Under the pieces are notes generated by a model that worked only from the letters and a program-made list of their open reading frames with translations, was not told the origin of the DNA and did not search any database. Positions 9,653 through 37,624 of a stretch of DNA of 64,000 nucleotides are shown one piece after another (position 1 is the first letter of the stretch; each line of letters starts with the position of its first letter). Source of the DNA: Raja brachyura (Eukaryota). Position numbers and translations under genes: made by a program. The stretch spans positions 178,312,001 through 178,376,000 of the forward strand of contig OY740781.1 in the NCBI GenBank assembly GCA_963514005.1, read 5' to 3'.

Positions 9653-9749
9653 CTAGATGTCACGGCCGTAGCAGGTGTCTGCAGGGGGAGGTGGGGGTTT
9701 GCATTGGGGTTCTCCAGGTAAAATTGGCTTTTGGTTGCAATTCTTGCAG
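9653..9749 (-). CDS. JCHAIN: JCHAIN exon 4, coding part
   Basis: ttttgttgcag| CKNC..QC..DTCY; TAG at 9655-9653. Confidence 0.9.
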
Positions 9750-12700
9750 CTGCAACAAAATATATGATCAAAGATATATTTCTCATTAACACAGTCATAG
9801 AGCTATGCCACACAGAAATATGCCCTTCAGCCCAACTCCCTCATGCTAACCAACATGTCAAACTGAGCTAGCCCAGTTTCCCCTATCCATATAACCATAT
9901 AACCATATAACAATTACAGCACGGAAACAGGCCTTCTCAGCCCCTCCAGTCCGTGCCGACCATGTATTTTCCCCTAGTCCCATCTACCTGCACTCAGACC
10001 ATACCCCTCCATTCCCTTCCCGTCCATATACCTATCCACTTTAATTTTAAATGTTACAATCGATCCTGCCTCCACCACTTCTGCTGGAAGATCATTCCGC
10101 ACAGCCACCACTCTCTGAGTAAAGAAGTTCCCCCTCATGTTACCCCTAAACTTCTGTCCCTTAATTCTCATGTCATGCCCTCTTGTTTGAATCTTCCCTA
10201 CCCTCAATGGGAAAAGCTTATCCACGTCAACTCTGTCAATCCCTTTCATCATTTTAAAGACCTCTATCAAGTCCCCCCTTAACCTTCTGCGCTCCAAAGA
10301 ATAAAGACCCAACTTGTTCAGCCTTTCTCTGTAACTTAGTTGCTGGAACCCAGGCAATATTCTAGTAAACCTCCTCTGTACTCTCTCTATTTTGTTGACA
10401 TCCTTCCTATAATTAGGCGACCAAAATTGTACTCCAGAATTGGTCTCACCAATGCCTAGTACAATTTTAACATTACTTCCCTACTCCTATATTCAATGCT
10501 CTGATTTATAAAGGCCAGCACACCAAAAGCTTTCTTTACCACCCTATCTACATGCGATTCCACCTTCAGGGAACTATGCACAGTTATTCCTAGATCCCTC
10601 TGTTCCACAGCATTCCTCAATTCCCTACCATTTACCATGTACGTCCTATTTTGATTTGTCCTGCCAAGATGTAGCACCTCACACTTATCAGCATTAAACT
10701 CCATCTGCCATCTTTCAGCCCACTCTTCCAAATGGCCCAAATCTCTGTGTAGACTCTGAAAATCTACCTCATTATCCACAACACCACCTATCTTAGAACC
10801 TATCCCTCTGAACCTTTTCTATCCACTTATCTGTCCAAATATTTTTTAACATGGTAACTATATTCATCTCTGCAACTCATTCTGGTAGCTTGATCTCTAA
10901 GCCCATCATCCTTGTCATGGAGAAAAATTATCCCTCCCGTTCCTTTAAATCTCTCCCCCCCCCCCTCCCCCCCTCCACCTTAAATCTATGCTCTCTCGTT
11001 TTAGAATTCCTGCTCTGGGAAAATGCTGTGATCATCCACTTTCTTCACACTCCTCCTGATCACATATACCTCTATAAGGTCACCACACTACCTCCTACAA
11101 TCCAGGGGTAAAAGTCCCAGCCCATTTCGCCTCTCTTTGTAACTCAAGCCTTCCAATCCCTGTGACATCCCCATACATTTCTTCTCTCCCCTTATCAGAT
11201 TAATGACATCTTTCCTGTAGCTTGGCGAGCAGGACTGCACATAGAACACCAAGTGTTTCTCCAGAATTCTCTGTGGTGTTCCAGGAAAACACCACAGAGA
11301 AATAGTACAAACTCCATGAAACAGCACCCGAGGTTTGGATCTAAGCTCGCAGGAGCAGAAGACAGCAGCTTTACTAATGACACCACCATTCAGCCTGAGT
11401 TATTCAGTTGTCACTAAATATTCAGAAATGGCTCAAGGAGGCCTGATTGTAGCATACTCGAGCTGTTGTTCCGAATTACACCACGTATTAAAATTTGAAT
11501 ACCAGATCTATTTACCAGATGTCAGGTGCAGGCTGTGTTCTGAAACCTGCTCTAATTATATATTGTAAAAAAAGAGATAAAAATATAAATCATACAAATC
11601 TGAAATTTTGTAGACAAACTTGTTCCGAATAGGGGAGGTTGGATCTGAAATGTTCTCTCTGCTCCTCGTGGGAACGCTGCAATAAAACAACAATGCAAGA
11701 ACAATGTAAGAACAACGCAAGAAACATGCAATCACTCTGATGGGATTACACTATAGCCCTTGCAATAGCCCGCAGGAGATAGAGGAGCAGACATGTAGAC
11801 AGACTATGGGGAGAGTCAATAGGAATGGGGTTGTTATAATGAGTGGCTTTTATTTCCCCAATATTGACTGGGATTTAATTAGTGCAAAAGATTAGGACAG
11901 TGCAGAGTTTGTATGGTGTATCCAAAAGGGTTTCTTGAACCAATTTGTGGATTGTTCAACTAGTGGAGGGACCCTACTGGACCTGTATTCGGAAATGAGC
12001 CTGGCTAGGTGTTTCTATGGAAGAACATTTTAGGAACATGTGATTGAGGCAGTGCGGCGTAGGTTCACGAGATTGATCCCTGGGATGGCAGGACTGTCAT
12101 ATGAGGAAAGATTGAAAATGCTAGGCTTGTATTCACTGCAGTTTAGAAGGATGAGGGGGGATCTTATAGAAACATATACAATTATAAAAGGACTGGACAA
12201 GTTAGATGCAGGATAAATGCTCCCAATGTTGGGAGAGTCCAGAACCAGGGGCCACAGTCTTAGAATAAAGGGGAGGTCATTTAAGACTGCGGTGAGAAAA
12301 ATCTTTTTCACCCAGAGAGTTGTGAATTTATGGAATTCCCTGCCACAGAGGGCAGTGGAGGCCAAGTCACTGGATGGATTTAAGAGAGAGTTAGATGGAG
12401 CTCTAGGGGCTAGTGGAGTCAAGGGATATGGGGAGAAGGCAGGCACGGGTTATTGGTAGGGGACGATCAGCCATGATCACAATGAATGGTGGTGCTCGCT
12501 CGAAGGGCCGAATGACCTCCCCCTGCACCTATTTTCTATGTTTCTATGAACTGTGATCACAACTCCATACATTTTAAGATAGTTATGAAGAGGGAAAAGT
12601 CGGGACCTAGGGGCATAAGTACTAAATTTGGATAAGGCAGAGTATAACATTATTCGGCAGGAGCTTCGGAGAGTACATTGGGAGCAGCATTTATGGAGAA

Positions 12701-15700
12701 GTCCACATCAGATATTTGGTATTTAGCTAAAGAATACCAAAGCTGATCAGAGTTGAGGATCAGCATGTTCCGGCAAGGAGAAGGGAGAAGGATGGCAAAG
12801 TAAGAGAATCTTGGGTGGTAAGAGAGGTTGTCAATGAGTAAAAGGAAACATATGTAAGGTTCAGGAAGATGTAATCAGACAGGGCCTTCGGGGAATATAG
12901 AGCAAGCAGGAAATAACTCAAGCAAGGAATCAGAATGGTTGTTAGGGGTTGTGTTATGGTCTGAGTCTGACTGATGTATTGATTACCACCTTTTTGTGAT
13001 AACGAATCGATGGACCACAGCACATAATTGCCCACAGTCTCCAATAATTAGTCTTTTCATTTTTTCAACCATGTGGATACATTCACATTTGAAAATGCAT
13101 TTACTTACACAATGTGTATATCTCTCATGAGCTGCTCCACGCCTCCACTATTAGGCAATGCAGACATTTTGGATGTGACAGTCATGCATTTACATTGTGA
13201 TTTAACTAGAAGGTGACTTTCCGCATCAGCTGTAAGAAAATAGACGTGGTTATTAGCTTTCTGAATCAGTAGCACTTATTATAAGTGTGGAAGTTACAAT
13301 GTCCAGGTGCAAATTGAATGTATCTGTTCATTGGCTTACGAGTACAGAAAAAACTATAAGTAAAGACAAGATAAGATACCGTTTATTGTCGTTTGAACCT
13401 AAGTTCAAACAAAATTTCGTTTCTGCCGTCATACGAACAAGAAAAAAACCAAGACACAATTAACACAATTTACACAGACATCCATCACAGTGAATCTCCA
13501 AACACCTCTTCACTGTGATGGAAGGCAAAGTCTTGTCTCTCTCCTGTTCTTTATTCTTCTCCCCGATGTTTGTATGTATGAATGTAAAGATAAGATATAG
13601 AAACAAAGAACTGCACGTGTTGGTTTATGCCAAAGATAAGCATTTCTCCAGCATCTCTGGAGAAATAGGATGAAACAACAGTCTGAAGAAGGTGCGCTGG
13701 GGTTGGCACTGGCTGGCAAGAGGAGATGATGGGAAAGGAAAATCAGATGAGCAGAATTCTAGATGATGGTAAACACCATCCCTGAATGCCCAGACCTCAT
13801 CAGCGTAGTTTAATGAGAAATCAGTTTTTGCAACATGTATTACAGATATCAGAACTATCTACTACAGGTGTCACTGTGCAAAATAACATATCTTGATTTA
13901 TTCAGAAAATAATAACTTTATTCAAGTCTTTGTTACAAATGGTAAATTGCTCTATATGACCCATGAGTAAAACCATTTAAAGATTCTCTGAAAGAGAAAA
14001 TGTTTATTAAAATGTTAAGAACAAGGAAAAAGAAGTCGGCCTTACGTACCCTTGTGCCTCTGTTGTTTGTTAAGATCATTGTCGTTCTTTCCCCCCAACA
14101 TTGTTTTCTTGTACCAAGCTCATTATCTTAGTATCTAGAAATCTATTGCTCTCTGTGACTCTCTTCCACAAATTCCTTGGATAGAGAATTCCTAACAGTA
14201 ATTATCTCCAGAGTGATTTTTTTTGTTGTCATCTGAGACCTGAATGGTCAAACCTTATTTAGCCTCCCCAGTCAAGGGAAATAATTCCTCAATCTATCCT
14301 GTCAAGTCTCATAAAGATTTCATATGTATCAATGAGATGACCTGTTATTCTCATTAATCTAAGAGATTGATGTAAGAGAGCCTGGTCCCAATCTGTTTCA
14401 TCAAACCTCGTACAACACAACCTCTCTCGTTAGAATCAGCCTGGTGAACCTTTGTTGCATTTTCTGTATGGCGAATCTACCCTTCCCAAATTAGGCAGGT
14501 ATGTACAGCCTCAGGAAGCCTAGATAATTGTTTTAAGCCATTTGTATTTTTGTACTCAAATCCTCTTGCAATAAAAGCCAACATAGCTCATTACATGTTG
14601 TGCCTCCATGCTATCTTTCAATAATTCATGTAAATGGATACTCAGATTCCTCTAACAATTACATCATTCAATCTTTAATTACTTAAAAAGACTCTGGCTT
14701 TCAATTTTTTCTACCAAAGTGTACAAATGTACATGTTGCCACAATCAGTTCTTGCCTGTTTTCCTGAAGCCTCTGCATCCGCATCACAACCAACATTGGT
14801 ATCTAGCAATGTAGCAAGTACGAATGTGGAGATTTTACATGATATCCAAATGGACATAGAATGTGAACAGTAGTTGCTCAGTCACTCTCTTTCACAGATC
14901 TCTGTAACTTCTGGCAGATGAGTGCTGGCCTTCCCAGTGACACCAACATGCCATAAACATTCATCACAAACAAGGGGACCGGAACATTATCTAAGCTGAC
15001 GGATTTGTGGTTATCTGGTTTACCTCACCTAAAATAATGTGGTGATAGCAGAGCTCTGAAAAATTATATCAATTATTTTATAATACTTAATTCTTTTAAA
15101 AATCCTATACCAAAAATCATCATGCCTTGAAGATTTATTTACAAAAAATCCATTATGTTTTTCCTTTACCTTTTAACATTTACATTTATTATATTTTTCC
15201 TTGATTTGCGTTTTGTTTTGTGTTGTTGATATTTTATTTGGATATAATTATATTTGGATATATTTTATCTGGATATAAAATATTAAATTCAAATGTGCTC
15301 CGTTCACTTAGTGTTCAATACAATCTCACTGGTATCTTTAACATATAGATTTTCCCTCTTATTGTTATTTTTCTAAATGCATTTATATTAAAAATTAGAT
15401 TTTTGGTTTTAACTTTGATGATGCTTGCAATTATTTTTCATGTTCTTGTATGTACTCCTGATGTAGCTCTGAGCAAAGATGTGGTTATCTTATTCAAAAT
15501 TAGTATTATAATGGCTGGCATTAGAAACGTAAATGTCTCTTTTTTGGCAGAGAGTATGCGTTTGGCACCGGGCTCAACTCGCATAGGGTTGAGGTAGAGG
15601 GTGGTTATATCAGTAGTCAAGTAATAAATGCAAGAACATGAAAAAAAATTGAAAGTATGATCAAAGTTAACAAATTTATATACATTAGTTCGTTTGAATT

Positions 15701-17009
15701 AAATCATGAAATAATGTATTTTGGAGTCTTTGAAATATAGTAGAGTTTTTGGAAACATAACAGTTTTTAAATTTGCTTTATGTGTGATTTTAAAATTTGT
15801 AATCATTTGTGAATCTGACAATTTATTTATACATTTATATGCTACAATTGCGTTTTACTATTCTGTCAGAATTTTAAATCTTTTCATTAATTTTTTTAGT
15901 TTTTTTCTGTTCTATTTATCTCAAAAAGTCTTAATTAATTGTCAAGGAGGCCCAATATAGCAGTGACCTATCAGCTTGGGTATGGGTATCAATATGGAAT
16001 GCTTTAGGACCTGTTATGACACTTTGCTTAAATAACTAAATGGAGATAAAGAATCCTAGCCCCTCAATTGATGAGGTGGTAACATTCCCTTTCTTTTGGT
16101 TAATGTGTTATGGATTGACACTGGAACTACCGGTAATCTGTAGTTAATTTATGGTGAGTAGAAACTAAAACCTCTGCAGCAGAAACTCATTTCAAATGGT
16201 TGCTCAAGTTTGGGAGGAATTACATAATGAGTAACTTTTATTTTAAATAGTCAAGATATGCCATGAAATGCACATTCATGGCCACAGGGAATACACAGCA
16301 AGAACAATGTTATCATTCATAAATCAATGGGACCGCTGCATGCTGAGGTGATCATATTCATCTGCAAAGAGACTGCATGAGCAGACGATGTTTAAAGATA
16401 TAGCATGGAAACAGGCCCTTCAGCCTTCCATGCTGACTATCAATATATTGACTATCACATGTTCTATGTTATCCCACTTTCTCATCCACTCTCTACACAT
16501 CAGGGACAAGTTACAGAGGCAAATTAACCTACAAACCCGCACGTCTTTGGAATGTGGGGGAAAACCAGAACACCGAGTGGAAATCCGAGCAATCACAGAA
16601 AGAACATGCAAACACCACACAGACAGCACCCAAGGTCAGGATCGAACCCGGGTCTCTGGTATTGTGAGGCAGCAGCTCTACCAGCTGCACCACTGTGCCA
16701 CTCTGAAGTACTGTCCACAAATCAATTTACAACCAGTCTAATCGATGATTTCTGCACATGCTTGTACCAATGTCTCCACAATCAATCAACTCATTGTTGT
16801 TGTTTCTCGTTATTTAGGAAGAAAATGTCTTCATTATTATTTTGTTTTTGTACTTTTGAGGTTTCTATTGCTAAGAAAACATGAAACATTTACTCATCAC
16901 ATTATCACATTGCACAATGAAAAATGTAATCATTAAACGCCACACCTGCTGCAAGAATTGTGAAAAGCAGAATTGCTGCAAAAGGCTTCAGCATTTGTTT
17001 GTTCTTCAT
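9653..17009 (-). CDS. JCHAIN: Immunoglobulin J chain gene, 4 coding exons, 120 aa, C-terminally short
   Basis: Spliced product MKNKQMLKPFAAILLFTILAA-ADAESHLLVKSQCKCMTVTSKMSALPNSGGVEQLMRDIHIV-VPTRSRENISDPTSPIRNKFVYKISDF-CKNCNQKPILPGEPQCKPPPPPADTCYGRDI*. GT/AG introns with phases 1,2,2. Hallmark CKC and RENISDPTSP motifs. Confidence 0.95.
9886..10797 (-). mobile_element. CR1 LINE 3' part in JCHAIN intron 3
   Basis: ORFs 10456-10779 and 9974-10357 are CR1 RT; (ATATGGTT)n tail; same subfamily as 46205-47447. Confidence 0.92.
11596..11676 (-). CDS. JCHAIN: JCHAIN exon 3 (81 nt)
   Basis: ttattgcag| VPTRSRENISDPTSPIRNKFVYKISDF |gtatga; conserved NIS glycosylation site. Confidence 0.97.
11776..12960 (+). 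mobile_element. Old CR1 endonuclease-region fragment with a younger CR1 3' piece nested at about 12040-12548 (JCHAIN intron 2)
   Basis: Decayed VVI..F.FPNIDW..LLDL motifs flank a CR1 3' end with (TTTCTATG)n. Confidence 0.8.
13109..13229 (-). CDS. JCHAIN: JCHAIN exon 2 (121 nt)
   Basis: ttttcttacag| .. LLVKSQCKCMTVTSKM..RDIHIV |gtaagt; compare human IVLVDNKCKCARITSR..RNIRII. Confidence 0.95.
14010..14890 (-). mobile_element. Ancient CR1 fragment (JCHAIN intron 1)
   Basis: Highly diverged match to the CR1 RT 3' region seen elsewhere in the window. Confidence 0.6.
16395..16700 (-). mobile_element. tRNA-derived SINE (V-SINE/HE1-like)
   Basis: Reverse GGCACAGTGGTGCAGC A box, GGGTTCGATCC B box, TTCCAAAGACGTGC core. 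Confidence 0.85.
16946..17009 (-). CDS. JCHAIN: JCHAIN exon 1 (signal peptide, 64 nt, phase 1)
   Basis: ATG AAG AAC.. hydrophobic core, ends GCA G|GTGTGG. The donor is weak but size and phase fit. Confidence 0.8.
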
Positions 17010-18068
17010 AACTGGAGCTTCACCTTCTAGGATCTTCCTTTTGTCTTGTGGCTCTCCACTTAGTCTCATCAGAGTGCTCAAACAAAATGAAAGACCAAAG
17101 TGTTTTGCCTGTTTTTTGAATTTGTGTCTTTAATTAGCTTCATATTATTTTCGGTTCCATTTTAAGACGTAGCTTCAGACAGAAACCAGATGCTGGATCT
17201 ACTGCCTTTGATTGGGGAGTTTCAAAAATCAAAAACGCAACTGAAATTAATTCAACCACAACTGGATAGCTTGCAATGATTTTGCTTAGTAAAAATAAAT
17301 CCAGTTTTGGCTCTAAACAGTGCAAGAAACAGTAGAGACCCACAGATGAAGTGAGATGTAAAGCATGGTGACAGTAATATGGGCTGAAAAAACAAACAAG
17401 TTTAAAAAACCACGTATTAATAAGGACAAACTAAAGTGTTTAACAGGTATATTGAGCGGGTGGCTGAAGAAATATGGAGCACTCCAAAGACAGATGCAAG
17501 GGACATTTTAAATGCAAATCAGAAAACCGCAGAATAGTTAAAAATATTGCTTGAATCCTCACAATAGGGATATGAGAAAACTAAAAATAAATCTATTGAA
17601 GATATTTACTGGGTTTTTAAGAAATAAAAGAAAAGTAATGGTAAAAATAATAGCTTAGAAATGAATTTATAACAATATTTTTCAGTGTTAAATCAATATT
17701 AGCGATCTCTGTGAAACGGCTTTGAACATTTCTGACAGGAGTGCGTTTATTGGTGCCTGCGTGAAAACTAGGGGATGATTTCCCTTATGAAATGCTGCTG
17801 TGCTTCTTCATGCAGACAAGGCGTTATTACCCAAACCTCGTGCTTCTGCCATATATCCTCACACCTCTGACTTCCTTTAAAGAGTCACGCCACGATGCAA
17901 GGAGAAATTCTCCAGCCAGCGGGGAATGTTCACAAGGAAAGATTGAATTCTCTGCTTCTGGGTTGGGAGGGAAGGGGTTGATATATCCTGGGGGCAGAGA
18001 AACCTACACTTTCTGGAGTAGAATAGTGTGTGGAGGAGGCATCTTCCTAGTCCAAGGACATTGCTTTT

Positions 18069-18894: not shown

Positions 18895-20100
18895 CAGCAC
18901 TACCCCTCCCACTTCGACAACAGAGACACCTTCGTGAAAATGCTGTTCATCGACTTTAGCTCAGCATTTAACACCATTTTCCCCTCCAAATTGATCACTA
19001 AGCTCATCGACCTGGGCATTGACCCCTCCCTCTGCAACTGGATACTGGACTTTCTAACCACCAAACCCCAGTCTGTTAGGTTAGACAACCACACTTCTTC
19101 AACCCTCACCCTGAACACCGGCGTTCCACAGGGCTGTGTGCTGAGCCCTCTCCTCTACTCCCTCTTTACCTATGACTGCGCACCTGCACATGGTACTAAC
19201 ACCATCATCAAGTATGCAGATGATACAACGGTGATTGCCCTCATCAGCGACAATGATGAGTCGGCCTAAAGGGAGGAGGTCCAGCTCCTAGCAGCATGAT
19301 GCGCTGACAACAACCTGGCCCTTAACACCAAGAAGACCAAGGAGCTCATTGTGGACTACAGAAGGTCTAGGGGTGGCACGCACACCCCCATCCATATTAA
19401 TGGTTAAGGAGGTGGAACGTGTTTCCAGCTTCTGGTTTCTGGGGGTCAACATCTCTGATGTCCTCTCTTGGACCCACAATACCTCAACACTGGTCAAGAA
19501 GGCTCACCAGCGTCTCTTCTTCCTGAGGAGACTAAAGAAGGTCCATCTGTCTCCTCAGATTCTGGTGAACTTCTACCGCTGCGCCATCGAGAGCATCCTT
19601 ACCAACTGCATCACAGTATGGTATGGCAACTGCTCTGTCTCCGACCGGAAAGCACTGCAGAGGGTGGTGAAAACTGCCCAACGCATCACCGGTTCCTCAC
19701 TCCCCTCCATTGAGTCTATCCAGAGCAAGCGATGTCTGCGAAGGGCACGCAGCATCGTCAAGGACTGGTCTCGCCCCAACCACAGACTGTTTACCCTCCC
19801 CCCATCTGGGAGACGCTACAGGTCCCTCCGTTCCCAGACCAGCAGGTTCAGGAGAAGCTTCTTCCCTGCGGTTGTTACAATACTTAACTTTGCACCTCAG
19901 TGATTGCCAATCACCCCCCCCCCCCCCCCCCCCCCCCCGAAAAGTGCACTACTGCTGTTGTATATACATATATATATTACTGTTCCATTAATCTGTGTTC
20001 GCACTCCTGGGTGAGATGCTAACTGCATTTCGTTGTCTCTGTACTTGTACACTGCACAATGGCAATAAAGTTTGAATCTTTGAATCTGAATCTGAATCTG
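18895..20100 (+). mobile_element. Rex1/Babar LINE, 5'-truncated
   Basis: [36 protein letters not shown]; (TGAATC)n tail. Confidence 0.93.
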
Positions 20101-21490: not shown

Positions 21491-21640
21491 GGGGGGGGGG
21501 GGTGTGGAAGATTGCAACCTTCATGTGGTCCGCCCTGTTTCGATGAATGCAATCAACCTGGTGTGCACAATCAAATAAGATCAAATAGAACAAGTTGTCC
21601 TACAACTTTAGGCTGTGCATGCCACATGCAAGAAGAAAAA
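21491..21640 (+). mobile_element. Short retroposon 3' end with (AAG)n tail
   Basis: 11-bp TSD gtctagtatgg (21480-21490 / 21641-21651); second copy at 55253-55396. Confidence 0.75.
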
Positions 21641-25947: not shown

Positions 25948-28900
25948 TGCCTGTACATGATCTATATCCCCCACTTCCTGTATATCCATGTGCCTATCCA
26001 AAAAACACTTAAATTACTCTTTAGTTTAGTTTAGTGATACAGGGCGGAAACAAGCCCTTCGGCCCACCGAGTCCGCACCGACCAGCGATCCCCGTGCATT
26101 AATGCTATCCTACACACACTAGGGATAATTTACATTTATACCAAGCCAATTAACCTCCAAACCTGTACATTTTTGGAGTGTGCGAAGAAAACGAAGATCT
26201 CAGAGAAAGCCCACGTGGTCACGGGGAGAACATACAAACTCCATACAGATAGCACCCGTAGATCAAACCCAGGTCTCCAACACTGTAATAGGTGTGAGGC
26301 AGCAACTCTACTGCTGAACCACCATGCCGCACAGTAATATTTAGTTCAGTTTAGTTTATTGTCATGTGTACTGAGGTACAGTGAAAAGCTTTTTGTTGCA
26401 CGCTATCCAGTCTGTGGAAAAACAATACATGATTACAATCGAGCTGTGTACAGTGTACAAATACAGGATAAAGGGAATAACATTTAATGCAAGATAAAGT
26501 CCGGTAAAGTCCGGCTAAAGATAGTCTGTGTTTCTCCAATGAGGTAGATGGTAGGTCAGGGCAGCTCTCCAGTTGGTGATTGGAAGGTTCAATTGGCTGA
26601 TAACAGCTGTGAAGAAACTGTCCCTGAATCTAGAAGTATGCATTTTCACACTTCTGTACCCTTTCCCTGATGGGAGAAGAGGGAATGTCTGGTGTGAGAC
26701 TCGTCCTTAATTATGTTGGTGGTTTTGCCAAGGCAGCATGAAATTTAGACGGAGTCAATGGAATAGATGTTGGATTCTGTGATGGTCTGGGCTGCGATCA
26801 CCAATTAAGAACTTATTAAGCGGAGCACTAATTGCACGCAGATATAAACATTGATAGATGAACAGATTAAGATATTGCTCCAGTGAACCAAACTGTGTGG
26901 ATCCAGGAGTAACGAACCAGCCTAATGTATGCAAAGTAAATGGGGCCGGGATTACAGCTAATTCCATGCTTTCTCCACTTAATTACGTGGAATAATATAG
27001 GACCAACTCACAAATATGTTTTCGGTTTTTTCCAGATAGTAGCGCTGAGTGAACTAAGGAGCCGAGTGCTGATAATTACTGAAAGACTGCAAATTCCTGA
27101 GAGGACAGTAATGTTCAATGTACAGTCTGCTTTGATGCAAGATTTGACAATGGAACACAAATAAACATATTAAAGATGGAGATAAACTCATGAGAAGCGA
27201 TGGCTCATGAATACAGGTTGTGAAATGTTGTGCAACAACCTGTTCTAATTGTGTTGTGAAATCAAAAACAGTTTGAGTGCTAACTCATGGGGTCACCACC
27301 ACAATTTGTACTCTATCATTGGTGAACGAGGGCAGGGACATTATATTGAGCAGAATTCTCACAATTTAAAAACATTCAGTAATACTTAAAGGGAATTGTG
27401 ATACAAAGAAAACATTTTATCAGATGGATCACAGCTTGGTTTGGGAACAGCTCCATCCAAGACCGCAAGAAATGCAACCAATTGTGGATGCAGCTCAGAC
27501 CATCACACAATCCATCCTTCCTTCCATTGACTCCATTTATACCTCACGCTGCCTCGGCAAAGCCAGCAGCATAATCAAGGATGAGTTGCACCCTGGCCAC
27601 TCCCTCAAAGGGCTGAATGGCCTATTCCTGCACCTATTTTCTATGTTTCTATGCTTGAGTATATGGCAATAAAACTCGACCACTTGATTTTGAAGCATTC
27701 ATGCATGGTGGAGGTATAATGTAGTCGTAGAGTGATGCAGTGTGAAACCCCTCCAACACCCTCCCCCCCATTCAGTCGCTCCACTCCCTCGCCGGGTACC
27801 CCGCAAGGCCAGTGATCTGTGATCATTCAGCCCCCCCCCACTTTCAAAAGCGCTCCGTGGTCCCTGCTACACTATCTTGGGAATATCTCATCACATGGTG
27901 GATCAAGGATCGTTAGAGGTGGAAATAAATGCTGGCCTTTGCTTGTTCTTGGATAATTTACATTACATTAATAAGGGACATTATATTGAGCATAATTCTC
28001 ACAATTTAAAAACATTCAGTAATACTTAAAGGGAATTGTGATTACAAGAAAACATTTTATCAGATGGATCACAGCTTGGTTTGGGAACAGCTCCATCCAA
28101 GACCGCAAGAAATTGCAGCCAATTATGGACAGAGCCCAGCTCAGACCATCACACAATCCATCCTTCCCTCTATTGACTCCATTTATACCTCACGCTGCCA
28201 TGGCAAGGCCAGCAGCATAATCAAGGACAAGTTGCACCCTGGTCACTCCCTCTTATCCCCTCTTTGATCAGGCAAAAGGTATAGAACTGTAAAAACGCAC
28301 ACCTCCAGATTTAGGGACAGTTTCTTCCCAGTTGGTATCAGGCAACTGAATCAACCTACCACAACCAGAGATCACTGCTGAACTACTATCTACCTCATTG
28401 GTGACCCTTGGACTATCCTTGATCGGGCTTTGCTGGCTTCACCTTGCACTAAACATTATTAACTTGTCATGTACCTATACACTGTAAATGGCTCAATTGC
28501 AATCATGTTTCATCTTCCTCCTGACTGGATAGCACGCAACAAAAGCTTTTCACTTTACCTCGGTAAATGTGACACTCCACTATCTTGGGAATATCTCCAT
28601 CACACAGTGGATCAAGGGTAGTTAGAGGTGGAAATAAATGTTGGCCTTTGCTTGGTTGAGATCTTAGATAATTTAACAAAAAGAGTTGCTGAGGGTCGTA
28701 TGATTGATGTATAGATGGACGTTCACAGAGCTGACAGAGACACGATAGGACAAGCGGCCTTTTCAGTGCACCATCACTGTATCATTATTAACAGCATTGT
28801 GTCTCTGGCGACACGGACAATCAGTTTGTACGTATATTTAACGCGATGATAAGGCACAGAGTTGGGTGAAAGGTTGGTTTGTTAGTCTACATGGAAACAT

Positions 28901-30133
28901 ATAATAGTGTAAACTGTGGGAGGGACAAGAATCAGAGACAGGCTGGTGAAGTGAGCAGACAAATGGTGAGTGAAATCCCATGGACCGAAATGTGAAGAGA
29001 AATATTTGAGTATGAAGAGGGGCAACATTCTGTGTTGGTAGTGACATTACAGTAGGAGGCAGGACTGAAGGAGGGAACACACAAGTCTCTGGCAGGGCAA
29101 GTTTGGAATGGTGCACAAGGGTAGATGGTATCCTTGGATTTATACATTAGTTATATTGAGAAATTGCAGAATCAGTAGTAAGAAAGGCAAATGCAATGTT
29201 ACATTTATTTCAAGAGGACTGGAATACAAAAACAGGGATGCAATGCTGAGGCTTTATAAAGCACTGGTCAGACTGCCCTTGGATTATTGTGAACAGTTTT
29301 GGGCCGCATATCTGAAGAAAGATGTGCTGGTGTTGGGGAGGGTCCAGAGGAGGTTCACGAGAATTGACCTATCTCTCCGCCTCAACCCCATTCTCCTGCC
29401 TTCTACCCATAAACCCTGACATGCACACTAATCAAGAATCTATCTATGTCTGCCTTAAACATATCCATTGACCTGGCCTCCACAGCCTACTGTGGCAATT
29501 AATTTCACAGATTCACTACCCTCTGACTAAAGAAATTCCTCCTTATCTACTTCCTAAAGAAACGTCATTTTATTCTGAGGCTATGACCCCTGGTCCTAGA
29601 TGCTTCTGGTTAGAATCATCGATCACTACTCCCCTCCATCCCACAGATGCTGGGAGTTCCTTCAGCAGATAATTTATTGCAAAATAAAAATATGTTTGAC
29701 AGTTTTAGCATGCAGTTTGCAGATGCCACTTCAGTAGGTGGTATTGTGGACAGTGAAGACATTTGTCAAGGATTGCAGTGGGATCTTGATCAGCTGGGCC
29801 AGTGGGCTGAGGAATAGCTGATGGAGTTTGGTGCAGGTGGGTGAGGGGTGTTTTGGGATTTTGGGAGGTCGGGTTGAGATGGGACCTTCATGTTGTATGT
29901 GGGCCCTGGGGCCGTGGTGGAGTAAGGGATGTAGGGGTGCTGGTGCATGGTTCGCTGGAGGTTGTGTCATAGGTGGGTAGGATGATGGAGAGGGCTTATT
30001 CTACATTGGCCCTTGGCGTTCAGGGTATTTAGTGTGGAGTTTGGAAAGTTCTGTTGCAGTTGTACAGGATGTTGGTGGGGCCACATTTGGAGCGCTGTGT
30101 TCAGTCTTGGTCACAGAGGTGTCATTGGGCTGG
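25948..30133 (+). repeat. Segmental duplication block A (composite of SINE, Rex1 and CR1 fragments and unique DNA)
   Basis: Colinear high-identity match to 41937-45385. Contains an internal duplication (about 27334-27960 vs 27973-28670). Confidence 0.92.
26020..26330 (-). mobile_element. tRNA-derived SINE; duplicated at about 42010-42310
   Basis: Reverse complement of the SINE at 18069. Confidence 0.8.
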
Positions 30134-30778
30134 AGGGAGAGTACAGAGAAGATGAGTGAGGATGTTGCTGGGACTGAGGGGCCTGAGGTGTAAGATTGGG
30201 ACTTTGTTCCTTGGAGTGCAGGAGGCTCTAGGGGTGATCTTGTGGAAGTGTATAGAATCATGGGGGGAATGGATGGGGTGAAGGCATGGTATCTTTTGCC
30301 CAAGGTGGGGAGGTTGGGATCCAGAGGACATAGGATTGGGGTGAGAGTGGCAAGAACTAGTGGGAACATGAGGGACAACTTTTTCTCTTGGAAGATGGTG
30401 GGTATTTGGAAATAATCTGCCAGAGGAGGTTGGTGAGGCAGATACTATAACAGCATTGACAAGTCACTTGGGCAGCTACATGTTTTAGAGGGATATGGGC
30501 CAAATGTGAACAAATGTGATTAGTTGATATGGGACATCTTGGTCAGCGTAGATGAGTTTGGCCGAATGATTTCCATGCTCTATCAGTTCAAGTGTTTAGG
30601 TGCTGATATACAGTATATATTTTCAAGTATCATACATATTGATGAACAATTTATAATAAATGTATAATTGAATCTATAATTAAAATAACTTTTCAACTAT
30701 AAAGCGTGTTTCACGACATCGAGATTATCTTAAATGAAATGAATCTCTTTGGAATGAATTCTCCACTGTAGCACTTAC

Positions 30779-31200
30779 CATTAAACTTCAATATGATTCT
30801 TCACCAAAGCGCCTTCCAATCCACAGATTTTCCTGGCTGATTTCATCTCCGTTCAGAAAGAAACTGCCATCTTTCATTTGGAATCTTACATGTAAAATGT
30901 CACCATATTAATTTCAAAATATAAGGGATTAGACTTCTGCAAGGATTTTTTGGTTTGCACCTTCTAACTTTGGTGGATGATCTACACACATAAATACCCA
31001 ATCTCTCCAGATGAGCTGGATACTCCATGGAAATATAAGCAAGCGAAAATTAAGTACATCAGGGATTTTTAAAATGATTTCTTCATTTCTGTATCCATTA
31101 CGACAGGGAGGGACTTCAGTCTCATATTAAATTCAACAATAGTAAATGAACTGGTTGACATCATTCAAAACTGCATTACTTTAAGATCAGTTGCTGCACA
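30779..31200 (-). pseudogene. Decayed CXC chemokine (CXCL13-like) relic, exons 2 and 3
   Basis: 31200-31074 (127 nt after ttatcttccag) ends TEVPPCRNGYRNEEII. About 30855-30779 reads EMKSARKIC(V)DWKALW(V)KNHIEV with two frameshifts, then |gtaagt. Stops present and exon-2 donor lost. Confidence 0.6.
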
Positions 31201-31221
31201 CTGGAAGATAACAAATGATCC

Positions 31222-33597
31222 AGCACAGCGGAGCTGAGGGGCGGTGGACTAGCGGAGCTGCAGAGCGGCGGACCAGCGAAGCACCCACAGACGGCGACGA
31301 GAACGCAAGCGTCGCCGAGGATGCCGAGGTGGGTTGAAGGCTAGGTTAGAACAAGCCCCACACAGGCCATCGATTCCTAGCCTTTTCCTCGCCAACGTAC
31401 GATCACTGGCAAACCAAATGGATGAACTCCGGCTACTGATCACCTCCCACAACTGGATCAAAGACTGCAGCATCCTGATCTTCACTGAAACCTGGCTCAA
31501 CACCGATGTTCCTGACAGCGCCATCGAGCTAACGGGGCGTCTTATACTCCGAGCGGACAGAACACAAGACTCCGGTAAGACCAGAGGTAGGGGGTCTGTG
31601 TATTTATGTAAATAAAGCATGGTGCACGGACACCACCATCATCGAGAGTCACTGCTCAGCTAACATAGAGTTCCTCTTGGTTAAATGCAGACCGTTCTAT
31701 CTGCCCAGAGAATTTACCTCCACTGTTCGATGCTCGAGCCTACAGTTCATCCAGGGCTAACCTGAAGAGGGGCATCAAGAAGGCCAAGCACAGCTACAAG
31801 CTTAGGATCGAGGAGCACTTCAACAACAACTCCGACCCCCGACGCATGTGGCAAGGCATCCAAGCCATCATGGACTTCAAACCCACCAACACCACCCCCA
31901 CATCCAGCGACTCATCCTTCCTTGAGGAGCTTAACCACTTTTATGGCTGTTTTGACAGGGACAAGCAAGAGATGGCCATCAAGGCTCTGCTCCCTGCTGA
32001 TCACCAGCCCCTCACACTCACCCCCTACAACGTGTATCTAGCACTGAGTAGGAATAATGCACGTAAAGCTGCTGGCCCTGACGGCATCCCCGGGCGCGTC
32101 CTCAGGACCTGTGCTGCACAGCTGACAGACGTCTGGACTGACATCTTCAGTCTTTAACTTGCCCAAGTAGTTGTCCCCACGTGCCTTAAAACCAACTCCA
32201 TCGTGCCGGTGCCAAAACACTCCACTGCGGCGAGCCCCAACGACTTCCGCCCAGTTGCACTTACCCCCATCATCACCAAGTGCTTCGAGAGGCTGGTCCT
32301 GGCACACCTCAAAGGCTGCCTACCTCCCACACTGGACCCCTATCAGTTTGCCTACCGCAAGAACAGGAGTATGGAGGATGCGATCTCAACGGCACTTCAC
32401 TCCCCCCTCTCCCACCTCGACAACAGAGACACCTACGTGAGAATGCTGTTCATCGACTATAGCTCAGCATTTAACACCATTATCCCCTCAAAATTGATCA
32501 CCAAACTCAGCGACCTGGGAATCAACCCCTCCCTCTGCAACTGGATACTGGACTTTCTAACCAACAGACCACAGTCTGTCAGGTTGGACAACCACACCTC
32601 TTCAACCCTCACCCTGAACACCGGTGTTCCACAGGGCTGTGTGCTGAGCCCCCTCCTCTACTCCCTCTTCACCTATGACTGCACACCTGTACATGGTTCT
32701 AACACCATCATCAAGTATGCAGATGATACAATGGTGATTGGCCTCATCAGCGACAACGATGAGTTGGCCTATAAGGAGGAGGCTCAGCTCCTAACAGCAT
32801 GGTGCGCTGACAACAACCTGGCCCTTAACTCCAAGAAGACCAAGGAGCTCATTGTGGACTATAGAAGGTCTAGGGGCTGCACGCACACCCCCATCCATAT
32901 TAATGGGATGGAGGTGGAACGTGTTTCCAGTTTCAGGTTTCTGGGGGTTAACATCTCTGCTGACCTCTCTTGGACCCACAATACCTCAACACTGGACAAG
33001 AAGGCTCACCAGCGTCTCTTCTTCCTGAGGAGACTAAAGAAGGTCTATCTGTCTCCTCAGATTCTGGTGAACTTCCACCACTGCGCCATCGAGAGCATCC
33101 TTACCAACTGCATCACAGTTTGGTATGGCAACTGCTTTGTCTCTGACCGGAAAGCACTGCAGAGGGTGGTGAAAACTGCCCAATGCATCACCGGTTCCTC
33201 ACTCCCCTCCATTGAGTCTGTCCAGAGCAAGCGATGTCTGCGAAGGGCGCGCAGCATCGTCAAGGACTGGTCTCACCCCAACCACAGACTGTTTACCCTC
33301 CTCCCATCCGGAAGCGCTACAGGTCCCTCCGTTGCCGGACCAGCAGGTTCAGGAACAGCTTCTTCACTGCGGCTGTTACAATACTTAACTTTGCACCTCA
33401 GTGATTGCCAATCACCCCCCCCCCCCCGGGACACTCCTTCCCCCAGCATAATTGCTGATACTGTTTGTACATATATATATTTTACCGTTCATTATTCTAA
33501 ATTCGTTCTTCTGGGGAGATGCTAACTGCATTTCATTGTCTCTGTACTGTACACTGCACAATGACAATTAAAGATTGAATTGAAATTGAATTGAATA
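31222..33597 (+). mobile_element. Rex1/Babar LINE with internal deletion
   Basis: APE motifs (LANVRSL, IFTETWL) at 31334-31730; 440-aa RT ORF 32203-33525; (TTGAA)n tail. Confidence 0.95.
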
Positions 33598-33878
33598 CCA
33601 CACAATTTAAGAAAGAAGAGGGAGAAAAAACTGGGTAACTGATGACCAGTATGTCAGGAAACAGTAATTTGGAGAAGGTTGCAATTTATTATACAGCAAA
33701 TACTCACAATGCACTCCGAAAATAATAATGGGATTGTGAATAATAAATAATGGTTGAAATGAATAGATTTTCTGATTTTAAGGGAATTACGTGATATGGG
33801 AGCTGGATCAGAAAATGGATAAAGTGCTGGATTTACCATGATCTTATTGAATAATGGGGAAGGGTGAGGAGGCTTTAA

Positions 33879-34083
33879 AGGGCCTGTCCCACTTACACAA
33901 CCTTTACAGCCGACTGCCAGCACCCGTGATAAGTCGCCGACATTTTCAACATGTTGAAAATTCAGCGACGACCAGAAAGATGCTACGACTCTTTGGAGAC
34001 CTATGGTTATGAGAGGTCACCCACGAAATGTCGCCAGGGGTCACCTGTATGGTCGTGAGAGGTCTCCTATGGTCGCGAGAGGT
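33879..34083 (+). mobile_element. MITE-like DNA transposon fragment (terminus AGGGCCTGTCCCACTT)
   Basis: The same terminus occurs at 40734 and inverted at about 40515-40527, each beside TAA. Superfamily (Harbinger or Kolobok) not resolved. Confidence 0.6.
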
Positions 34084-34149
34084 GACTAAGCACGCAGCCT
34101 TGAGGTGCTCCCGTGCTGATTGTTATCGAGGCTGACTGTTGACAGTAGT

Positions 34150-35440
34150 CTTTTTTTTTTTTTTTTTAATTTTATTTTTTAATATTTTTATTTATTAGAG
34201 GTAAATACATCAGTGTACATCACATATATATTGTTACAATCATTGTACCCCATAATTTTATGGGTTTTAAAGAAAAAGACTAGAAAGAAAGAGAGTGAAG
34301 TAGGTGAAAAGAGTTGTGATAGTGAAAGAGCGTGCCAAAGGGGAGAAGAAAAAAACCCTTGGTCAAAGAGTTAGAGAAAGGGGATTAAGAGATAGACCCT
34401 GGAAAAGAAAAAAGAAAGAGAGACAAAGGAAAAAAAAGCCAGTTACTATTATATATCACACAAAAGGAATCCACCAACTCGATAGTTTTTCATCCCCCCC
34501 TACCAAGGCCCGAGGTACTCCTGCACCCTATCTTTGTAGCAATTCTATAAATGCAGACCACGTCTGATAGAAGCAATCTGATTTTCCTTCCAGGCGGAGT
34601 CTCATATCTTCCAGATGTAATGTTTCAAACATAGTTGAAATCCACATATTTAATGTTGGTATAGGAGCATTTTTCCAGAATTTTAAGATGAGCTTTTTTC
34701 CTATTATTAAGCCGTAATCAAATAAATTCTTTTGAGACACATTTAATTCCGAACTACCTATTTGTCATTCCGAAAATAATCCATTCTGGCTTTGGTGTCA
34801 TTTTTATTTTAAACAGTTTTGTAAAGATTTCAAAGATTCCAATCCAAAACCGTTTAATTTTTGTACAAAAGATGAATGAGCGCGCTATGGTAGCTTCTTG
34901 AAACTGGCATTTATCACAAATTGGTAAGACGTTAGGGAAAAATGTATTTAATTTAGTTTTTGAGCAGTATAATCTGTGTAAAATTTTAAATTGTATTAAA
35001 GTGTGTCTTACGTTAATTGAGCATTTGTACACATTTAATAAGTACTCTTTCCACCTTTCATTGGAAATTCTTATGCTTAGTTTGTCTTCCCACTCACCTC
35101 TGATACCTTCCGTTGTTTGTATTACTGCATTTAGTATATTATATATATGTGAAATTAAATTTGCTGAATCCGCCTTTGTATCCATTACTTCATCTAGTAA
35201 GTCTAATGGCATTTTGTGAAATTCTTGTGCATGTTTTTTCAGATAATCACATATTTGGAAATATTTAAAATGCTGATTGTTACCCAGATTGTATTTTAAT
35301 TGTAATTGTTTAAATGATAATAGTTTTTCCGTATCATACAAATCTCCCAAAATTTTAATTCCTGCTCTTTTCCAGGAAGCTCTGTATAAATGCTTTATCT
35401 ATAATTGAGGGTTTAAACAGAGGGTTTTTTAACAATAGGA
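34150..35440 (-). mobile_element. L1-clade LINE 3' end
   Basis: ORF2 C-terminus (QFKILHRLY, CDKCQ..SFIFC), polyA tail, 16-bp TSD gactgttgacagtagt (34134-34149 / 35441-35456). Confidence 0.93.
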
Positions 35441-36616
35441 GACTGTTGACAGTAGTTAACTACAAGTGCTAACAGTAGTAGTTAACGAATCTTTTTTGTC
35501 TGATAGCCGGTGTTTGCAGTGCTTTTTATCCATGTTCGTTTAAAAAAAAAAATCTGTATTTAACAAGGCAAATGTACTTTTTTCATCCGTGAAATACGGA
35601 AAGTTAGCGCAGGGCCCCCCTTAGGGAGCAATCGGCTTAAGACCGGCCCTGTGTCAGAGGCACATTTGTCCTACACTTTCCTTCATCTCGGCCATGCCCT
35701 CTTATTGCTGCTACTGTCAGGCAGGAGGTCCAGAAGCCTGAAGTCCCGCAACACCAGGTTCAGGAATAGTTACTCTCTTATATCGTCAGGTTCTTCAACT
35801 GACCTGAACAACTCTAATCCTACCTCGGCAACACAATAAAGACCACTTCTCACACTACCTTGGACTTGTGAGGGGATAAGATAGAATAGAGCAAAACAGA
35901 GGATAAACGTAGTCACGCAGAAGATGTTACAAATGTTTAACACATTTTACCACAGTGGGTGGTGTGGATAGGTTTCTCACAACATTATAGAAGCTTCTGG
36001 ATGAGCACTTGTATTGCCAATGCATAGAAGGTTACAGACAAAGTACTAGTAAATGGCATTGATATAGATGCGTACTGGATATCATGGACATGGTATGCTG
36101 CTTTACCCGTTTCTGTCGAAGATAGACACAAAATGCTGGAGTTGCAAAATGCATTGGGTCAGGCAGCAATTCTGGAGAAAAGAATAGGTGATGTTTCGGG
36201 TCAAGACCCATTTTCAGACTCATTCAGCCTATTTCTGTGTTCTTTACCTCTATAAATCTAAATGACTTAACTTAGCTTTGGTGTTCCGTATCATTCTCCC
36301 TGTGTCTCTTTAAAATGATGACCAGGATGCGATTATTGGATTCAAAGCAGTTTATTAACATAACTTGAACGCACACAATTTCTCATACATATAATATAGC
36401 AAGCTCTCTACAGACACATTTCTTGCTGTGGCATTATATTTAGGAACAGACAAATACATTTTAGAATGCCATTTATTTGATGCTTAAATCATATCAGAGA
36501 TACAATCCTTTTTATTTAGAATTAAAATCAGTTCACCATAAAAACGTTTGTATGTATAAAACCTGTTTCATCACCTCAGGATACCATTGTGGCAATGAAG
36601 CCCTTCAAAATGTATC

Positions 36617-36713
36617 CTACTCTTCAGTTTTGTTAAGTAAGTCCATAATAAACGGCTTCACCCAGGGACTCTTCCCACTCAAACAAACTTCCATTTTTGG
36701 TTTCAGATGAACT
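36617..36713 (-). CDS. CXC chemokine exon 3
   Basis: ttttctttcag| VHLKPKMEVCLSGKSPWVK..*; AATAAA downstream at 36477-36472 and 36356-36351. Confidence 0.9.
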
Positions 36714-37624
36714 CTGAAAGAAAAAGGGAAACACTTTATCTTTCTAGTTATTAGATTTTTTGGAGGGGGTTGGGGGGGATAAATTGCAACATCATTTAAT
36801 TAAAAAATGTTTGTCAGAGTTCTCTTGTTTGTTCATTTCACTTGTGGCAGATGATCTGCAGATAAAAATGTAATTCATACAATTTCTCCACATTATCATG
36901 AATCTCACCCATTGAAATATAAACATGAACATTTAAATGCATGAACAATTCTTACATGACTTCCGAGTATTGGCACCCTTTGCCCCCCGGTGTAGATTTC
37001 AATTTTATAAATACGATCCTTGGACGTGGAATTTGTTTCATACTCCGAGCACCTACATCGTGATCCTTCATTGTTATTTATATGAGCCGCTGTAAAACAA
37101 ATGACATGTTGTAAAAATATATTCCTTAAAATTAGTTTAATTACTTTCAATGTTCACAATGTGGCCACTTCTTTGGCCTTCTGCACTGTTATAACAAGGC
37201 CTATTCTAAGACCAAGGAAGGACACATCAAGTTCCACATGGACACATAGTAACCTGCAAGACTGAACATCAAATAGAACAACCTGGAAAACACACACACT
37301 GTCTGTGAATCAGAACCTGCCAAACCCCCTCAGGATTCTATGTCTCAGTGTGATCACCGCTCATTTTTTAAGTTACAATGAGTACAGACCCACCCGCTTC
37401 AACCATTTCTTATAAGACAATCCATATTTAATATTATGCAAGTGAACATTCGGCGAACTGTCTTCAATAGTTCATTCAACTGGCTGAATGAATCAAAAAT
37501 CTAATAACAATTATAAAGCTTAAAGACTATAATTGACAGGATCTAGGGTATTTTCCTCACCCATAGCCAAAGCTGCACAAATTCCAAGCAGCAGCAGGAG
37601 TGTAACACTAACACTGTACTTCAT
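36617..37624 (-). CDS. CXC chemokine (non-ELR, CXCL13/CXCL8-like), 3 coding exons; +1 G frameshift in exon 2 as assembled
   Basis: Removing one G from the run at 36983-36988 gives 97 aa: MKYSVSVTLLLLLGICAALAMAAHINNNEGSRCRCSEYETNSTSKDRIYKIEIYTGGKGCQYSEVIVHLKPKMEVCLSGKSPWVKPFIMDLLNKTEE. Spacing C-x-C-x24-C-x15-C; exons 64/133/97; phases 1,2. Confidence 0.9.
36956..37089 (-). CDS. CXC chemokine exon 2 (134 nt as assembled, 133 expected)
   Basis: ttgttttacag| ..RCRC..IEIY..GCQYSEVI |gtaaga. Confidence 0.88.
37561..37624 (-). CDS. CXC chemokine exon 1 (signal peptide, 64 nt)
   Basis: MKYSVSVTLLLLLGICAALAM G|gtgagg. Confidence 0.9.

What the first reader, a model, noticed from the sequence alone, without database searches (positions are those of the whole stretch)
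9653..37624. JCHAIN sits in tandem with CXC chemokine genes and shares their gene architecture
Seen in sequence: JCHAIN, a chemokine relic and a CXC chemokine lie on the same strand within 28 kb, with no other gene I can recognise between them. Both genes have a 64-nt phase-1 signal-peptide exon and a phase 1-to-2 second exon carrying C-x-C (CKC vs CRC) that ends in a hydrophobic strand (DIHIV vs SEVIV). Established: J chain has been proposed to be a co-opted CXC chemokine (Kawasaki, Ohta, Castro and Flajnik, PNAS 2024; cited from memory), so the idea itself is not new. Inference: this locus preserves the ancestral linkage, and the neighbouring chemokine lineage may be informative about J chain's origin.
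Basis: partly seen in the sequence, partly recalled or inferred. Interest (0 to 1): 0.85.

Follow-up and report, generated by a model that had tools for sequence, protein, structure and literature searches.

The report
Shark JCHAIN beside CXC chemokine genes
The antibody-joining J chain gene lies about 20 kb downstream of a CXC chemokine gene and a decayed chemokine copy on the same strand, with matching exon structure, but a 2024 paper already showed this linkage in sharks, rays and chimaeras.

Summary
All three items lie on the minus strand.

- JCHAIN has four predicted exons (17009-16946, 13229-13109, 11676-11596, 9749-9653) with intron phases 1-2-2.
- A decayed chemokine copy lies at about 31123-30684.
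- A three-exon CXC chemokine lies at 37624-36617.
- Only LINE retrotransposon fragments lie between them.

Both genes have a 64-nt phase-1 signal exon and a C-x-C motif early in exon 2.

As assembled, chemokine exon 2 is 134 nt and breaks the frame at a run of six G (36983-36988). DNA contigs of three public runs all carry five G. That gives 133 nt, phase 1-to-2 and an intact 97-aa chemokine with CXCL8-like cysteine spacing.

Kawasaki et al. 2024 (PMC10801876) already report jchain downstream of cxcl genes in eight cartilaginous fishes, with the same phases and CXC position.

Nothing here shows that this particular neighbour is the ancestral donor. The two exon-2 peptides show no sequence similarity, and the chemokine genes here have duplicated and decayed.

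The scan also noted a second JCHAIN-plus-chemokine pair about 700 kb away in the same genome (s1-880680, unchecked).

No RNA run was found, so the splice junctions rest on prediction. Searches and folds of the joined spliced models were left out.

The parts
16946..17009 (-). JCHAIN exon 1, coding part: 64 nt, phase 1, signal peptide MKNKQMLKPFAAILLFTILAA
   Evidence: Scan for ATG + hydrophobic stretch + GT; sequence read; donor CAG|GTGTGG. Predicted, with no RNA evidence.
13109..13229 (-). JCHAIN exon 2: 121 nt, phase 1 to 2, holds CKC and ends DIHI + split V
   Evidence: Pfam Ig_J_chain E 5.4e-4; PDB 9ec7_J E 0.0099.
11596..11676 (-). JCHAIN exon 3: 81 nt, phase 2 to 2, RENISDPTSPIRNKFVY core
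   Evidence: Pfam Ig_J_chain E 1.8e-9, above the cut-off; only J chains hit in the PDB, E 1.4e-7.
9653..9749 (-). JCHAIN exon 4, coding part: CKNCNQKPILPGEPQCKPPPPPADTCYGRDI then TAG at 9655-9653
   Evidence: No Pfam or PDB match, in line with the divergent elasmobranch C-terminus described in PMC4279169 and PMC10801876.
9499..9652 (-). Stretch after the JCHAIN stop that stays open in another frame for 51 codons (RECLY...PPPCQ...), with two further Cys
   Evidence: Open by chance in 7.5% of shuffles, so this is only suggestive. No database relative.
9439..9444 (-). AATAAA signal about 210 nt after the JCHAIN stop
   Evidence: Function inferred.
30684..31123 (-). Decayed CXC chemokine copy: 3' end of exon 2 (NGYRNEEII against KGCQYSEVI), intron 2 and exon 3 (KIC-GLEGALVK against EVCLSGKSPWVK). 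Third Cys changed to Tyr, donor GT and acceptor AG lost, in-frame stop.
   Evidence: blastn 48.3 bits, E 2.4e-7 against the rest of the window; 0 of 200 shuffles reach it; alignment A1.
31215..33600 (+). LINE-type retrotransposon fragment (RVT_1 E 4.5e-33) on the opposite strand, just upstream of the relic
   Evidence: 90.7% identical to a second copy at 18903-20097.
37561..37624 (-). CXC chemokine exon 1, coding part: 64 nt, phase 1, MKYSVSVTLLLLLGICAALAM
   Evidence: donor GTGAGG.
36956..37089 (-). CXC chemokine exon 2: 134 nt as assembled, 133 nt in public reads. Holds CRC and the third Cys.
36983..36988 (-). Run of six G that breaks the frame; five G in all covering contigs of three public runs
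   Evidence: table 4 (place 36983, 1 letter left out, depth_with equals depth in X1, X5 and X6).
36617..36713 (-). CXC chemokine exon 3 with the fourth Cys, the WV motif and the stop codon
   Evidence: Only chemokines hit in the PDB (CCL20, CCL3; E 0.057-1.3); Pfam IL8 E 0.11; Atlas hits are all IL8-family.
37699..37706 (-). TATAAATA 82 nt upstream of the chemokine ATG; possible TATA box
   Evidence: Read. Inference only.

Best explanation
This is the JCHAIN end of a cartilaginous-fish CXCL chemokine cluster. A CXC chemokine gene, a dead tandem copy of it and the J chain gene are transcribed in the same direction, with JCHAIN last.

The chemokine would encode a secreted 76-residue basic protein with four cysteines in CXCL8 spacing. 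J chain would encode a secreted 99-residue basic protein whose first four cysteines sit at the same mature positions as in mammals (13, 15, 69, 72; human numbering from my own knowledge).

The shared features are a 64-nt phase-1 signal exon, a signal/mature boundary at intron 1, C-x-C about 12 residues into exon 2, and a phase-2 intron after a hydrophobic strand. They fit the published view that JCHAIN arose by tandem duplication of a neighbouring CXCL gene in the ancestor of jawed vertebrates.

The extra G in chemokine exon 2 is most likely a homopolymer error of the assembly or a private allele.

Shown here: gene identities, positions, strand, predicted phases, the five-G reading and the homology of the relic. 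Inferred: splicing, expression and the evolutionary direction.
For: - J chain identity.
- Exon coordinates, splice sites, phases, lengths, pI and Cys positions.
- Chemokine identity: canonical Cys spacing (C-x-C, 24, C, 15, C) once read with five G. Exon 3 hits only chemokines (Pfam IL8 E 0.11).
- Five G in public contigs from three coded organisms and studies.
- Relic homology.
- Only LINE fragments between the genes.
- Published synteny, phases and basic pI of cartilaginous-fish J chains: PMC10801876. The pI of 8.6 found here agrees with it.
Against: - No RNA run holds the stretch, so no junction is confirmed.
- The window's own letters give a broken chemokine frame.
- The chemokine's exon-wise scores against Pfam and the PDB are marginal, and exon 2 alone finds nothing.
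- J chain exon 4 has no detectable relative and ends before the last disulfide pair of tetrapod J chains.
- There is no sequence similarity between the two genes, so common descent rests on architecture and linkage only, as in the paper.
- The 28-kb adjacency itself was not tested with long reads.
Confidence: 0.85

Rival explanations
1. The chemokine is a true pseudogene: the sixth G is real, and the locus holds JCHAIN plus two dead chemokine genes.
For: The assembled sequence has six G and a 295-nt CDS. A neighbouring copy is already dead. No RNA run was found.
Against: All covering contigs in three runs have five G, one of them otherwise identical to the window over 223 nt. Apart from that one base, the splice sites, all four Cys, the start and the stop are intact.
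Confidence: 0.08
2. The adjacency is an assembly artefact, such as a misjoin or a collapsed or duplicated segment in a repeat-rich region.
For: The assembly has at least one indel error or private allele. The interval is full of LINE copies and a 92%-identical 4-kb repeat pair. A scan note reports a second, similar pair 700 kb away, which could confuse an assembler.
Against: There is no gap between 9653 and 37624; the only N run is at 56162-56310. The same gene order and orientation are published for eight cartilaginous fishes.
Confidence: 0.04
3. The linkage is real, but the neighbouring chemokine is a young, lineage-specific duplicate. It therefore says nothing specific about J chain's donor gene: the shared architecture is family-wide, not special to this pair.
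For: - There is no similarity between the exon-2 peptides.
- A decayed tandem paralogue sits beside the chemokine.
- Divergent in-frame contigs lie over exon 2 in public runs, with a loose end at 36975 reading ...IEIFTATGNC. They fit another paralogue.
- A scan note reports a second pair.
- Kawasaki et al. find the 1-2-2 phases in most CXCL genes.
Against: Not tested by a tree: no shark chemokine sequences could be fetched. The CXCL8-like Cys spacing and WV motif fit the cluster-A type that the paper places next to jchain in all chondrichthyans, so orthology of the neighbour could still be old.
Confidence: 0.55

Closest known systems
JCHAIN-CXCL cluster A synteny of chondrichthyans (Kawasaki, Ohta, Castro, Flajnik, PNAS 2024, PMC10801876)
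   Same: jchain lies downstream of cxcl genes in the same orientation. JCHAIN intron phases are 1-2-2. The signal/mature boundary falls at intron 1. CXC lies in exon 2. Exon 1-3 sizes are similar. The J chain is basic.
   Different: The species is unknown here and may or may not be one of those analysed. The nearest chemokine has no ELR motif and ends its coding sequence in exon 3. A decayed chemokine copy lies between the two genes. JCHAIN as assembled stops before the last Cys pair.
Human JCHAIN (4q13) and the CXCL8/CXCL1-7 cluster
   Same: The four-exon J chain shares the RENISDPTSP(L/I)R core and Cys at mature positions 13, 15, 69 and 72. It is linked to CXCL genes.
   Different: According to the paper, JCHAIN in sarcopterygians lies next to cluster B after a lineage-specific inversion. 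Human J chain is acidic, has 137 residues and eight Cys. This one is basic (pI 8.6), has 99 residues and six Cys.
CXCL8 (interleukin-8)
   Same: Cys spacing is identical (C-x-C, 24 residues, C, 15 residues, C; CXCL8 positions from my own knowledge). A WV motif follows the fourth Cys. The phase-1 signal exon and the phase-2 intron after the EIIV-like strand also match.
   Different: GSR stands in place of ELR before the CXC. The N-terminus before the CXC is long and Asn-rich. No significant sequence match to any solved CXC chemokine was found exon by exon. The best weak hits are CC chemokines.
Nurse shark J chain (Hohman et al. 2003, as described in PMC3743840 and PMC4279169)
   Same: The N-terminal half is conserved with the N-I-S-D-P core, the C-terminal region is poorly conserved, and there is an extra Cys reported at residue 84 (a Cys at mature position 84 here too; numbering not checked against that alignment).
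   Different: The nurse shark sequence could not be fetched, so no alignment was made. Whether its C-terminus is as short as this one is not known from what I could read.

Membership tests
Immunoglobulin J chain (Pfam PF15097) | Conserved core RENISDPTSP.R..FVY (region 2) encoded by exon 3 | tested here: met
   Pfam E 1.8e-9, 38.1 bits against a cut-off of 27. PDB J chains only, E 1.4e-7, residues 41-66.
Immunoglobulin J chain (Pfam PF15097) | C-x-C at mature positions 13 and 15 in exon 2, and C-x-x-C at 69 and 72 | tested here: met
   Local translation of the exons. Exon 2 aligns with PDB 9ec7_J residues 6-43.
Immunoglobulin J chain (Pfam PF15097) | Four coding exons with intron phases 1-2-2 | tested here: met
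   Predicted from AG/GT sites and the frame. Not confirmed by RNA.
Immunoglobulin J chain (Pfam PF15097) | Eight cysteines, including the C-terminal pair (Cys 7-8 hairpin of tetrapods) | tested here: not met
   Six Cys, with a stop at 9655-9653 before the last pair. Elasmobranch J chains are known to diverge here (PMC4279169, PMC3743840), so this does not exclude membership.
Immunoglobulin J chain (Pfam PF15097) | Expression in plasma cells and disulfide bonding to the IgM tail | not testable with these tools
   No RNA run was found.
CXC chemokines (Pfam IL8, PF00048) | Four cysteines: C-x-C, then two more in canonical spacing | tested here: met
   Cys at mature 12, 14, 39 and 55 when read with the five G that the public reads show. 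Not met by the window's letters as assembled.
CXC chemokines (Pfam IL8, PF00048) | Score above the Pfam gathering threshold | tested here: inconclusive
   Only single exons could be searched. Exon 3 gives 13.1 bits against a cut-off of 21.3, E 0.11. Exon 2 gives no hit. The joined model was not searched.
CXC chemokines (Pfam IL8, PF00048) | Signal exon in phase 1 and second intron in phase 2 | tested here: met
   64-nt exon 1, and a 133-nt exon 2 with five G. Predicted, with no RNA evidence.
CXCL8-like subgroup (as defined in PMC10801876: ELR motif, Glu residue, WV motif) | ELR before the CXC, and WV after the fourth Cys | tested here: not met
   GSR precedes CRC. WV is present (SPWVK). Fish CXCL8 often lacks a strict ELR (my own knowledge), so this is a weak exclusion.
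Chondrichthyan JCHAIN / CXCL cluster A synteny | jchain downstream of cxcl genes in the same orientation | tested here: met
   All three items lie on the minus strand in the order chemokine, relic, JCHAIN.
Chondrichthyan JCHAIN / CXCL cluster A synteny | Flanking markers (anxa5 side, other cluster-A cxcl genes) | not tested
   The rest of the window (1-9.6 kb and 38-64 kb) holds only retroelement ORFs. The markers would lie outside the window.

The most novel reading that the evidence does not exclude
JCHAIN and its upstream chemokine were duplicated as a unit in this genome, giving two pairs about 700 kb apart according to a scan note. This copy would encode a naturally shortened, basic, 99-residue J chain with six cysteines that lacks the last disulfide hairpin. 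That would be a 'minimal' J chain, closer in size and charge to a chemokine. It would be either a working variant restricted to IgM polymerisation or a paralogue with another role.
Probability: 0.12. Interest if true: 0.5.

Novelty: already known. Interest (0 to 1): 0.2.

Why it matters
The origin of J chain was an open question for 50 years. It was answered in 2024 from exactly this kind of evidence: linkage to CXCL genes, identical intron phases and CXC in exon 2. This window is a clean extra example of that result and adds no new principle.

It adds three minor things.
- An annotation point: the chemokine is hidden in the assembly by one extra G that public reads do not carry.
- Evidence of gene turnover next to JCHAIN, in the form of a dead tandem chemokine copy.
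- A short J chain reading frame that deserves a look at the reads.

If the JCHAIN-proximal chemokines proved orthologous across cartilaginous fishes, they would be the natural outgroup for reconstructing how a chemokine became J chain. That remains to be tested.

Tried and rejected
- **Database relatives.** I could not fetch shark J chain or chemokine proteins.
  - The search for homologous proteins on stop-free stretches around J exon 4 in the other frame, chemokine exon 2 and J exon 3 found no candidate. Its length window excludes full-length proteins for exon-sized queries.
  - The search of protein representatives with the 39-aa J exon 2 gave no hit at E 0.001 or better. The query is too short for a library of 1.8 billion.
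  - No tree of chemokines and J chains could therefore be built.
- **Chemokine exon 2.** Searched alone, it found nothing in the PDB or the Atlas.
- **J exon 4.** It found nothing in Pfam or the PDB in either frame.
- **Direct similarity.** BLASTP of J chain exon 2 against chemokine exon 2 gave nothing even at E 100.
- **Relic.** tblastn with the intact chemokine's peptides did not find it; only sensitive blastn did. My first frame for the relic's exon 3 (QENLWIG, resembling ENWV) was a coincidence. The DNA alignment puts the homologous frame at KIC-GLEGALVK. The relic's supposed 5' exon beyond the LINE has no similarity.
- **More chemokines.** No third chemokine copy lies beyond the 92% repeat at 41.9-45.4 kb. 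A pattern scan found no further CXC exon in the window.
- **Uninformative step.** A phage-collection search of the LINE told me nothing.
- **RNA.** No RNA holder was found. X20, guessed to be RNA, covered only the 3' flank.
- **Left out.** Searches, Pfam scoring and structure prediction of the joined spliced proteins, because a spliced model has no reference. Only local translation was done.
Full report
**What is in the window**

The window is vertebrate DNA rich in retroelements. All features of the finding lie on the minus strand.

**JCHAIN**

- Exon 3 (11676-11596, 81 nt) encodes VPTRSRENISDPTSPIRNKFVYKISD. It matches Pfam Ig_J_chain above the curated cut-off (E 1.8e-9, 38.1 bits). Among solved structures it matches only J chains (E 1.4e-7, mature residues 41-66).
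- Exon 2 (13229-13109, 121 nt) encodes DAESHLLVKSQCKCMTVTSK...RDIHI plus a split Val. It aligns with a solved J chain at E 0.0099.
- A scan for ATG, a hydrophobic stretch and GT found the signal exon at 17009-16946. It is exactly 64 nt, encodes MKNKQMLKPFAAILLFTILAA and has the donor CAG|GT.
- Exon 4 starts at 9749 and reaches TAG at 9655-9653.
- All splice sites are canonical and the joined CDS is 363 nt, with phases 1-2-2.
- The predicted mature protein has 99 residues, pI 8.6 and Cys at 13, 15, 69, 72, 84 and 94.
- The basic charge agrees with what Kawasaki et al. report for cartilaginous-fish J chains.

**The chemokine**

- Exon 1 is 37624-37561 (64 nt, MKYSVSVTLLLLLGICAALAM), exon 2 is 37089-36956 and exon 3 is 36713-36617 including the stop.
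- As assembled, exon 2 has 134 nt. The frame that carries CRC and the frame that carries GCQYSEVI differ by one, and the joined CDS has 295 nt.
- The break lies in a run of six G at 36983-36988.
- I laid contigs of four public runs on 36450-37750. In all three runs that cover the place (three coded organisms and studies), every contig leaves one letter out there.
- One contig of X5 is identical to the window over 223 nt except for that gap.
- The sixth G is therefore an assembly error or a private allele.
- With five G, exon 2 has 133 nt (phase 1 to 2). The gene then encodes 97 residues with mature Cys at 12, 14, 39 and 55, which is the spacing of CXCL8 (CXCL8 positions from my own knowledge).
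- Exon 3 alone hits only chemokines in the PDB (CCL20, CCL3; E 0.057-1.3; Cys and WV aligned). It also gets Pfam IL8 at E 0.11 and only IL8-family clusters in the Atlas.
- These scores are marginal because single exons are short. Family membership rests mainly on the cysteine pattern, the signal peptide and the gene structure.
- The motif before the CXC is GSR, not ELR. WV is present.
- The stop lies in exon 3, so only two introns interrupt the predicted coding sequence.

**The relic**

- Peptide searches with the intact chemokine did not find it.
- Sensitive blastn aligned 36540-36963 with 30684-31081 on the same strand, colinear, at 48.3 bits and E 2.4e-7. None of 200 shuffles came close (mean 21.9, max 31.1).
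- The alignment shows a decayed exon-2 end: NGYRNEEII against KGCQYSEVI, with the third Cys now Tyr and the donor GT lost.
- It also shows well-kept blocks of intron 2, a lost acceptor and an exon 3 with an early stop in which the fourth Cys and VK survive.
- A LINE fragment on the opposite strand (RVT_1, E 4.5e-33) lies directly upstream.

**Between and around the genes**

- ORFs between the genes and in the rest of the window are reverse transcriptase, endonuclease, RNase H and gag-like fragments.
- No further CXC exon was found.
- There is no assembly gap inside 9653-37624.

**How the two genes compare**

- Both have a 64-nt phase-1 signal exon.
- Both have a split Ala codon at intron 1 and a C-x-C after 12 (J chain) or 11 (chemokine) mature residues.
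- Both have a phase-2 intron at the end of a hydrophobic strand (DIHI|V and SEV|I|V).
- Their exon-2 peptides have no detectable sequence similarity.
- This is the same situation as in the literature.

**What is known**

Kawasaki, Ohta, Castro and Flajnik (PNAS 2024, PMC10801876) state the following.
- JCHAIN is linked to CXCL clusters in all jawed vertebrates that have it.
- JCHAIN and most CXCL genes share four exons with phases 1-2-2.
- The signal/mature boundary and the CXC position coincide.
- In whale shark, six other sharks and rays, and elephant shark, jchain lies downstream of cxcl genes next to the CXCL8-like cluster A, with 'one or more' jchain genes.

The finding is a correct reading of one more such locus, not a new idea. 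A search for follow-up work on sharks found none.

**What the locus does not show**

Nothing here identifies this neighbour as the donor lineage.
- The chemokine genes here have duplicated and decayed.
- Public runs hold divergent, in-frame contigs over exon 2 that fit another paralogue (loose end at 36975).
- The scan notes a second JCHAIN-plus-chemokine pair about 700 kb away in the same genome (s1-880680, unchecked).
- A tree would decide, but no shark sequences could be fetched.

**Limits**

- No RNA run holds the stretch, so all junctions are predictions.
- Searches and folds of the joined spliced proteins were left out because a spliced model has no reference. Exons were searched one by one.

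**Verdict**

The further hope that this neighbour is specially informative is untested. Novelty is low.

Noticed in passing
window 9499-9690 (-): JCHAIN stops (TAG 9655-9653) right after the sixth Cys. Another frame stays open for 51 more codons and holds two further Cys (RECLY...PPPCQ), roughly where tetrapod Cys 7 and 8 lie. This could be a one-base error or mutation, or a truly short J chain. There is no homopolymer at the site. The frame is open by chance in 7.5% of shuffles, and it has no database relative. This is also scan note s1-880725.
   Followed up: partly
window 25948-30133 and 41937-45385 (+): Two colinear segments of about 3.6-4.2 kb are 92% identical and about 16 kb apart. One lies just downstream of the relic and the other upstream of the intact chemokine. 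No chemokine copy was found next to the second segment. This is either a segmental duplication or a large repeat (scan note s1-880840).
   Followed up: partly
window 36870-37049 (public runs X1, X5, X6): Besides near-identical contigs, the runs hold contigs 5-10% divergent over chemokine exon 2. Their loose end at 36975 reads in frame as ...IEIFTATGNC in place of IEIYTGGKGC. This is probably a paralogous chemokine gene, perhaps the one of the second pair noted 700 kb away.
   Followed up: no
window 18903-20097 and 32406-33596 (+): Two copies of the same LINE-type element (RVT_1 plus an ALKBH8_N-like segment) are 90.7% identical. One lies in the JCHAIN-relic interval and one abuts the relic.
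   Followed up: partly
window 300-3650 (-): Remains of an LTR-type retroelement lie downstream of JCHAIN: an RNase H domain (E 3.4e-28) and a zinc-knuckle gag-like ORF.
   Followed up: no
window 9898-10794 (JCHAIN intron 3) and 46203-47106, 63575-64000: A LINE tail fragment inside JCHAIN intron 3 is 89-90% identical to copies elsewhere in the window. The family appears to have been active recently.
   Followed up: no
window 56162-56310: This is the only N run in the window (149 N). It lies outside the finding and was left untouched.
   Followed up: no
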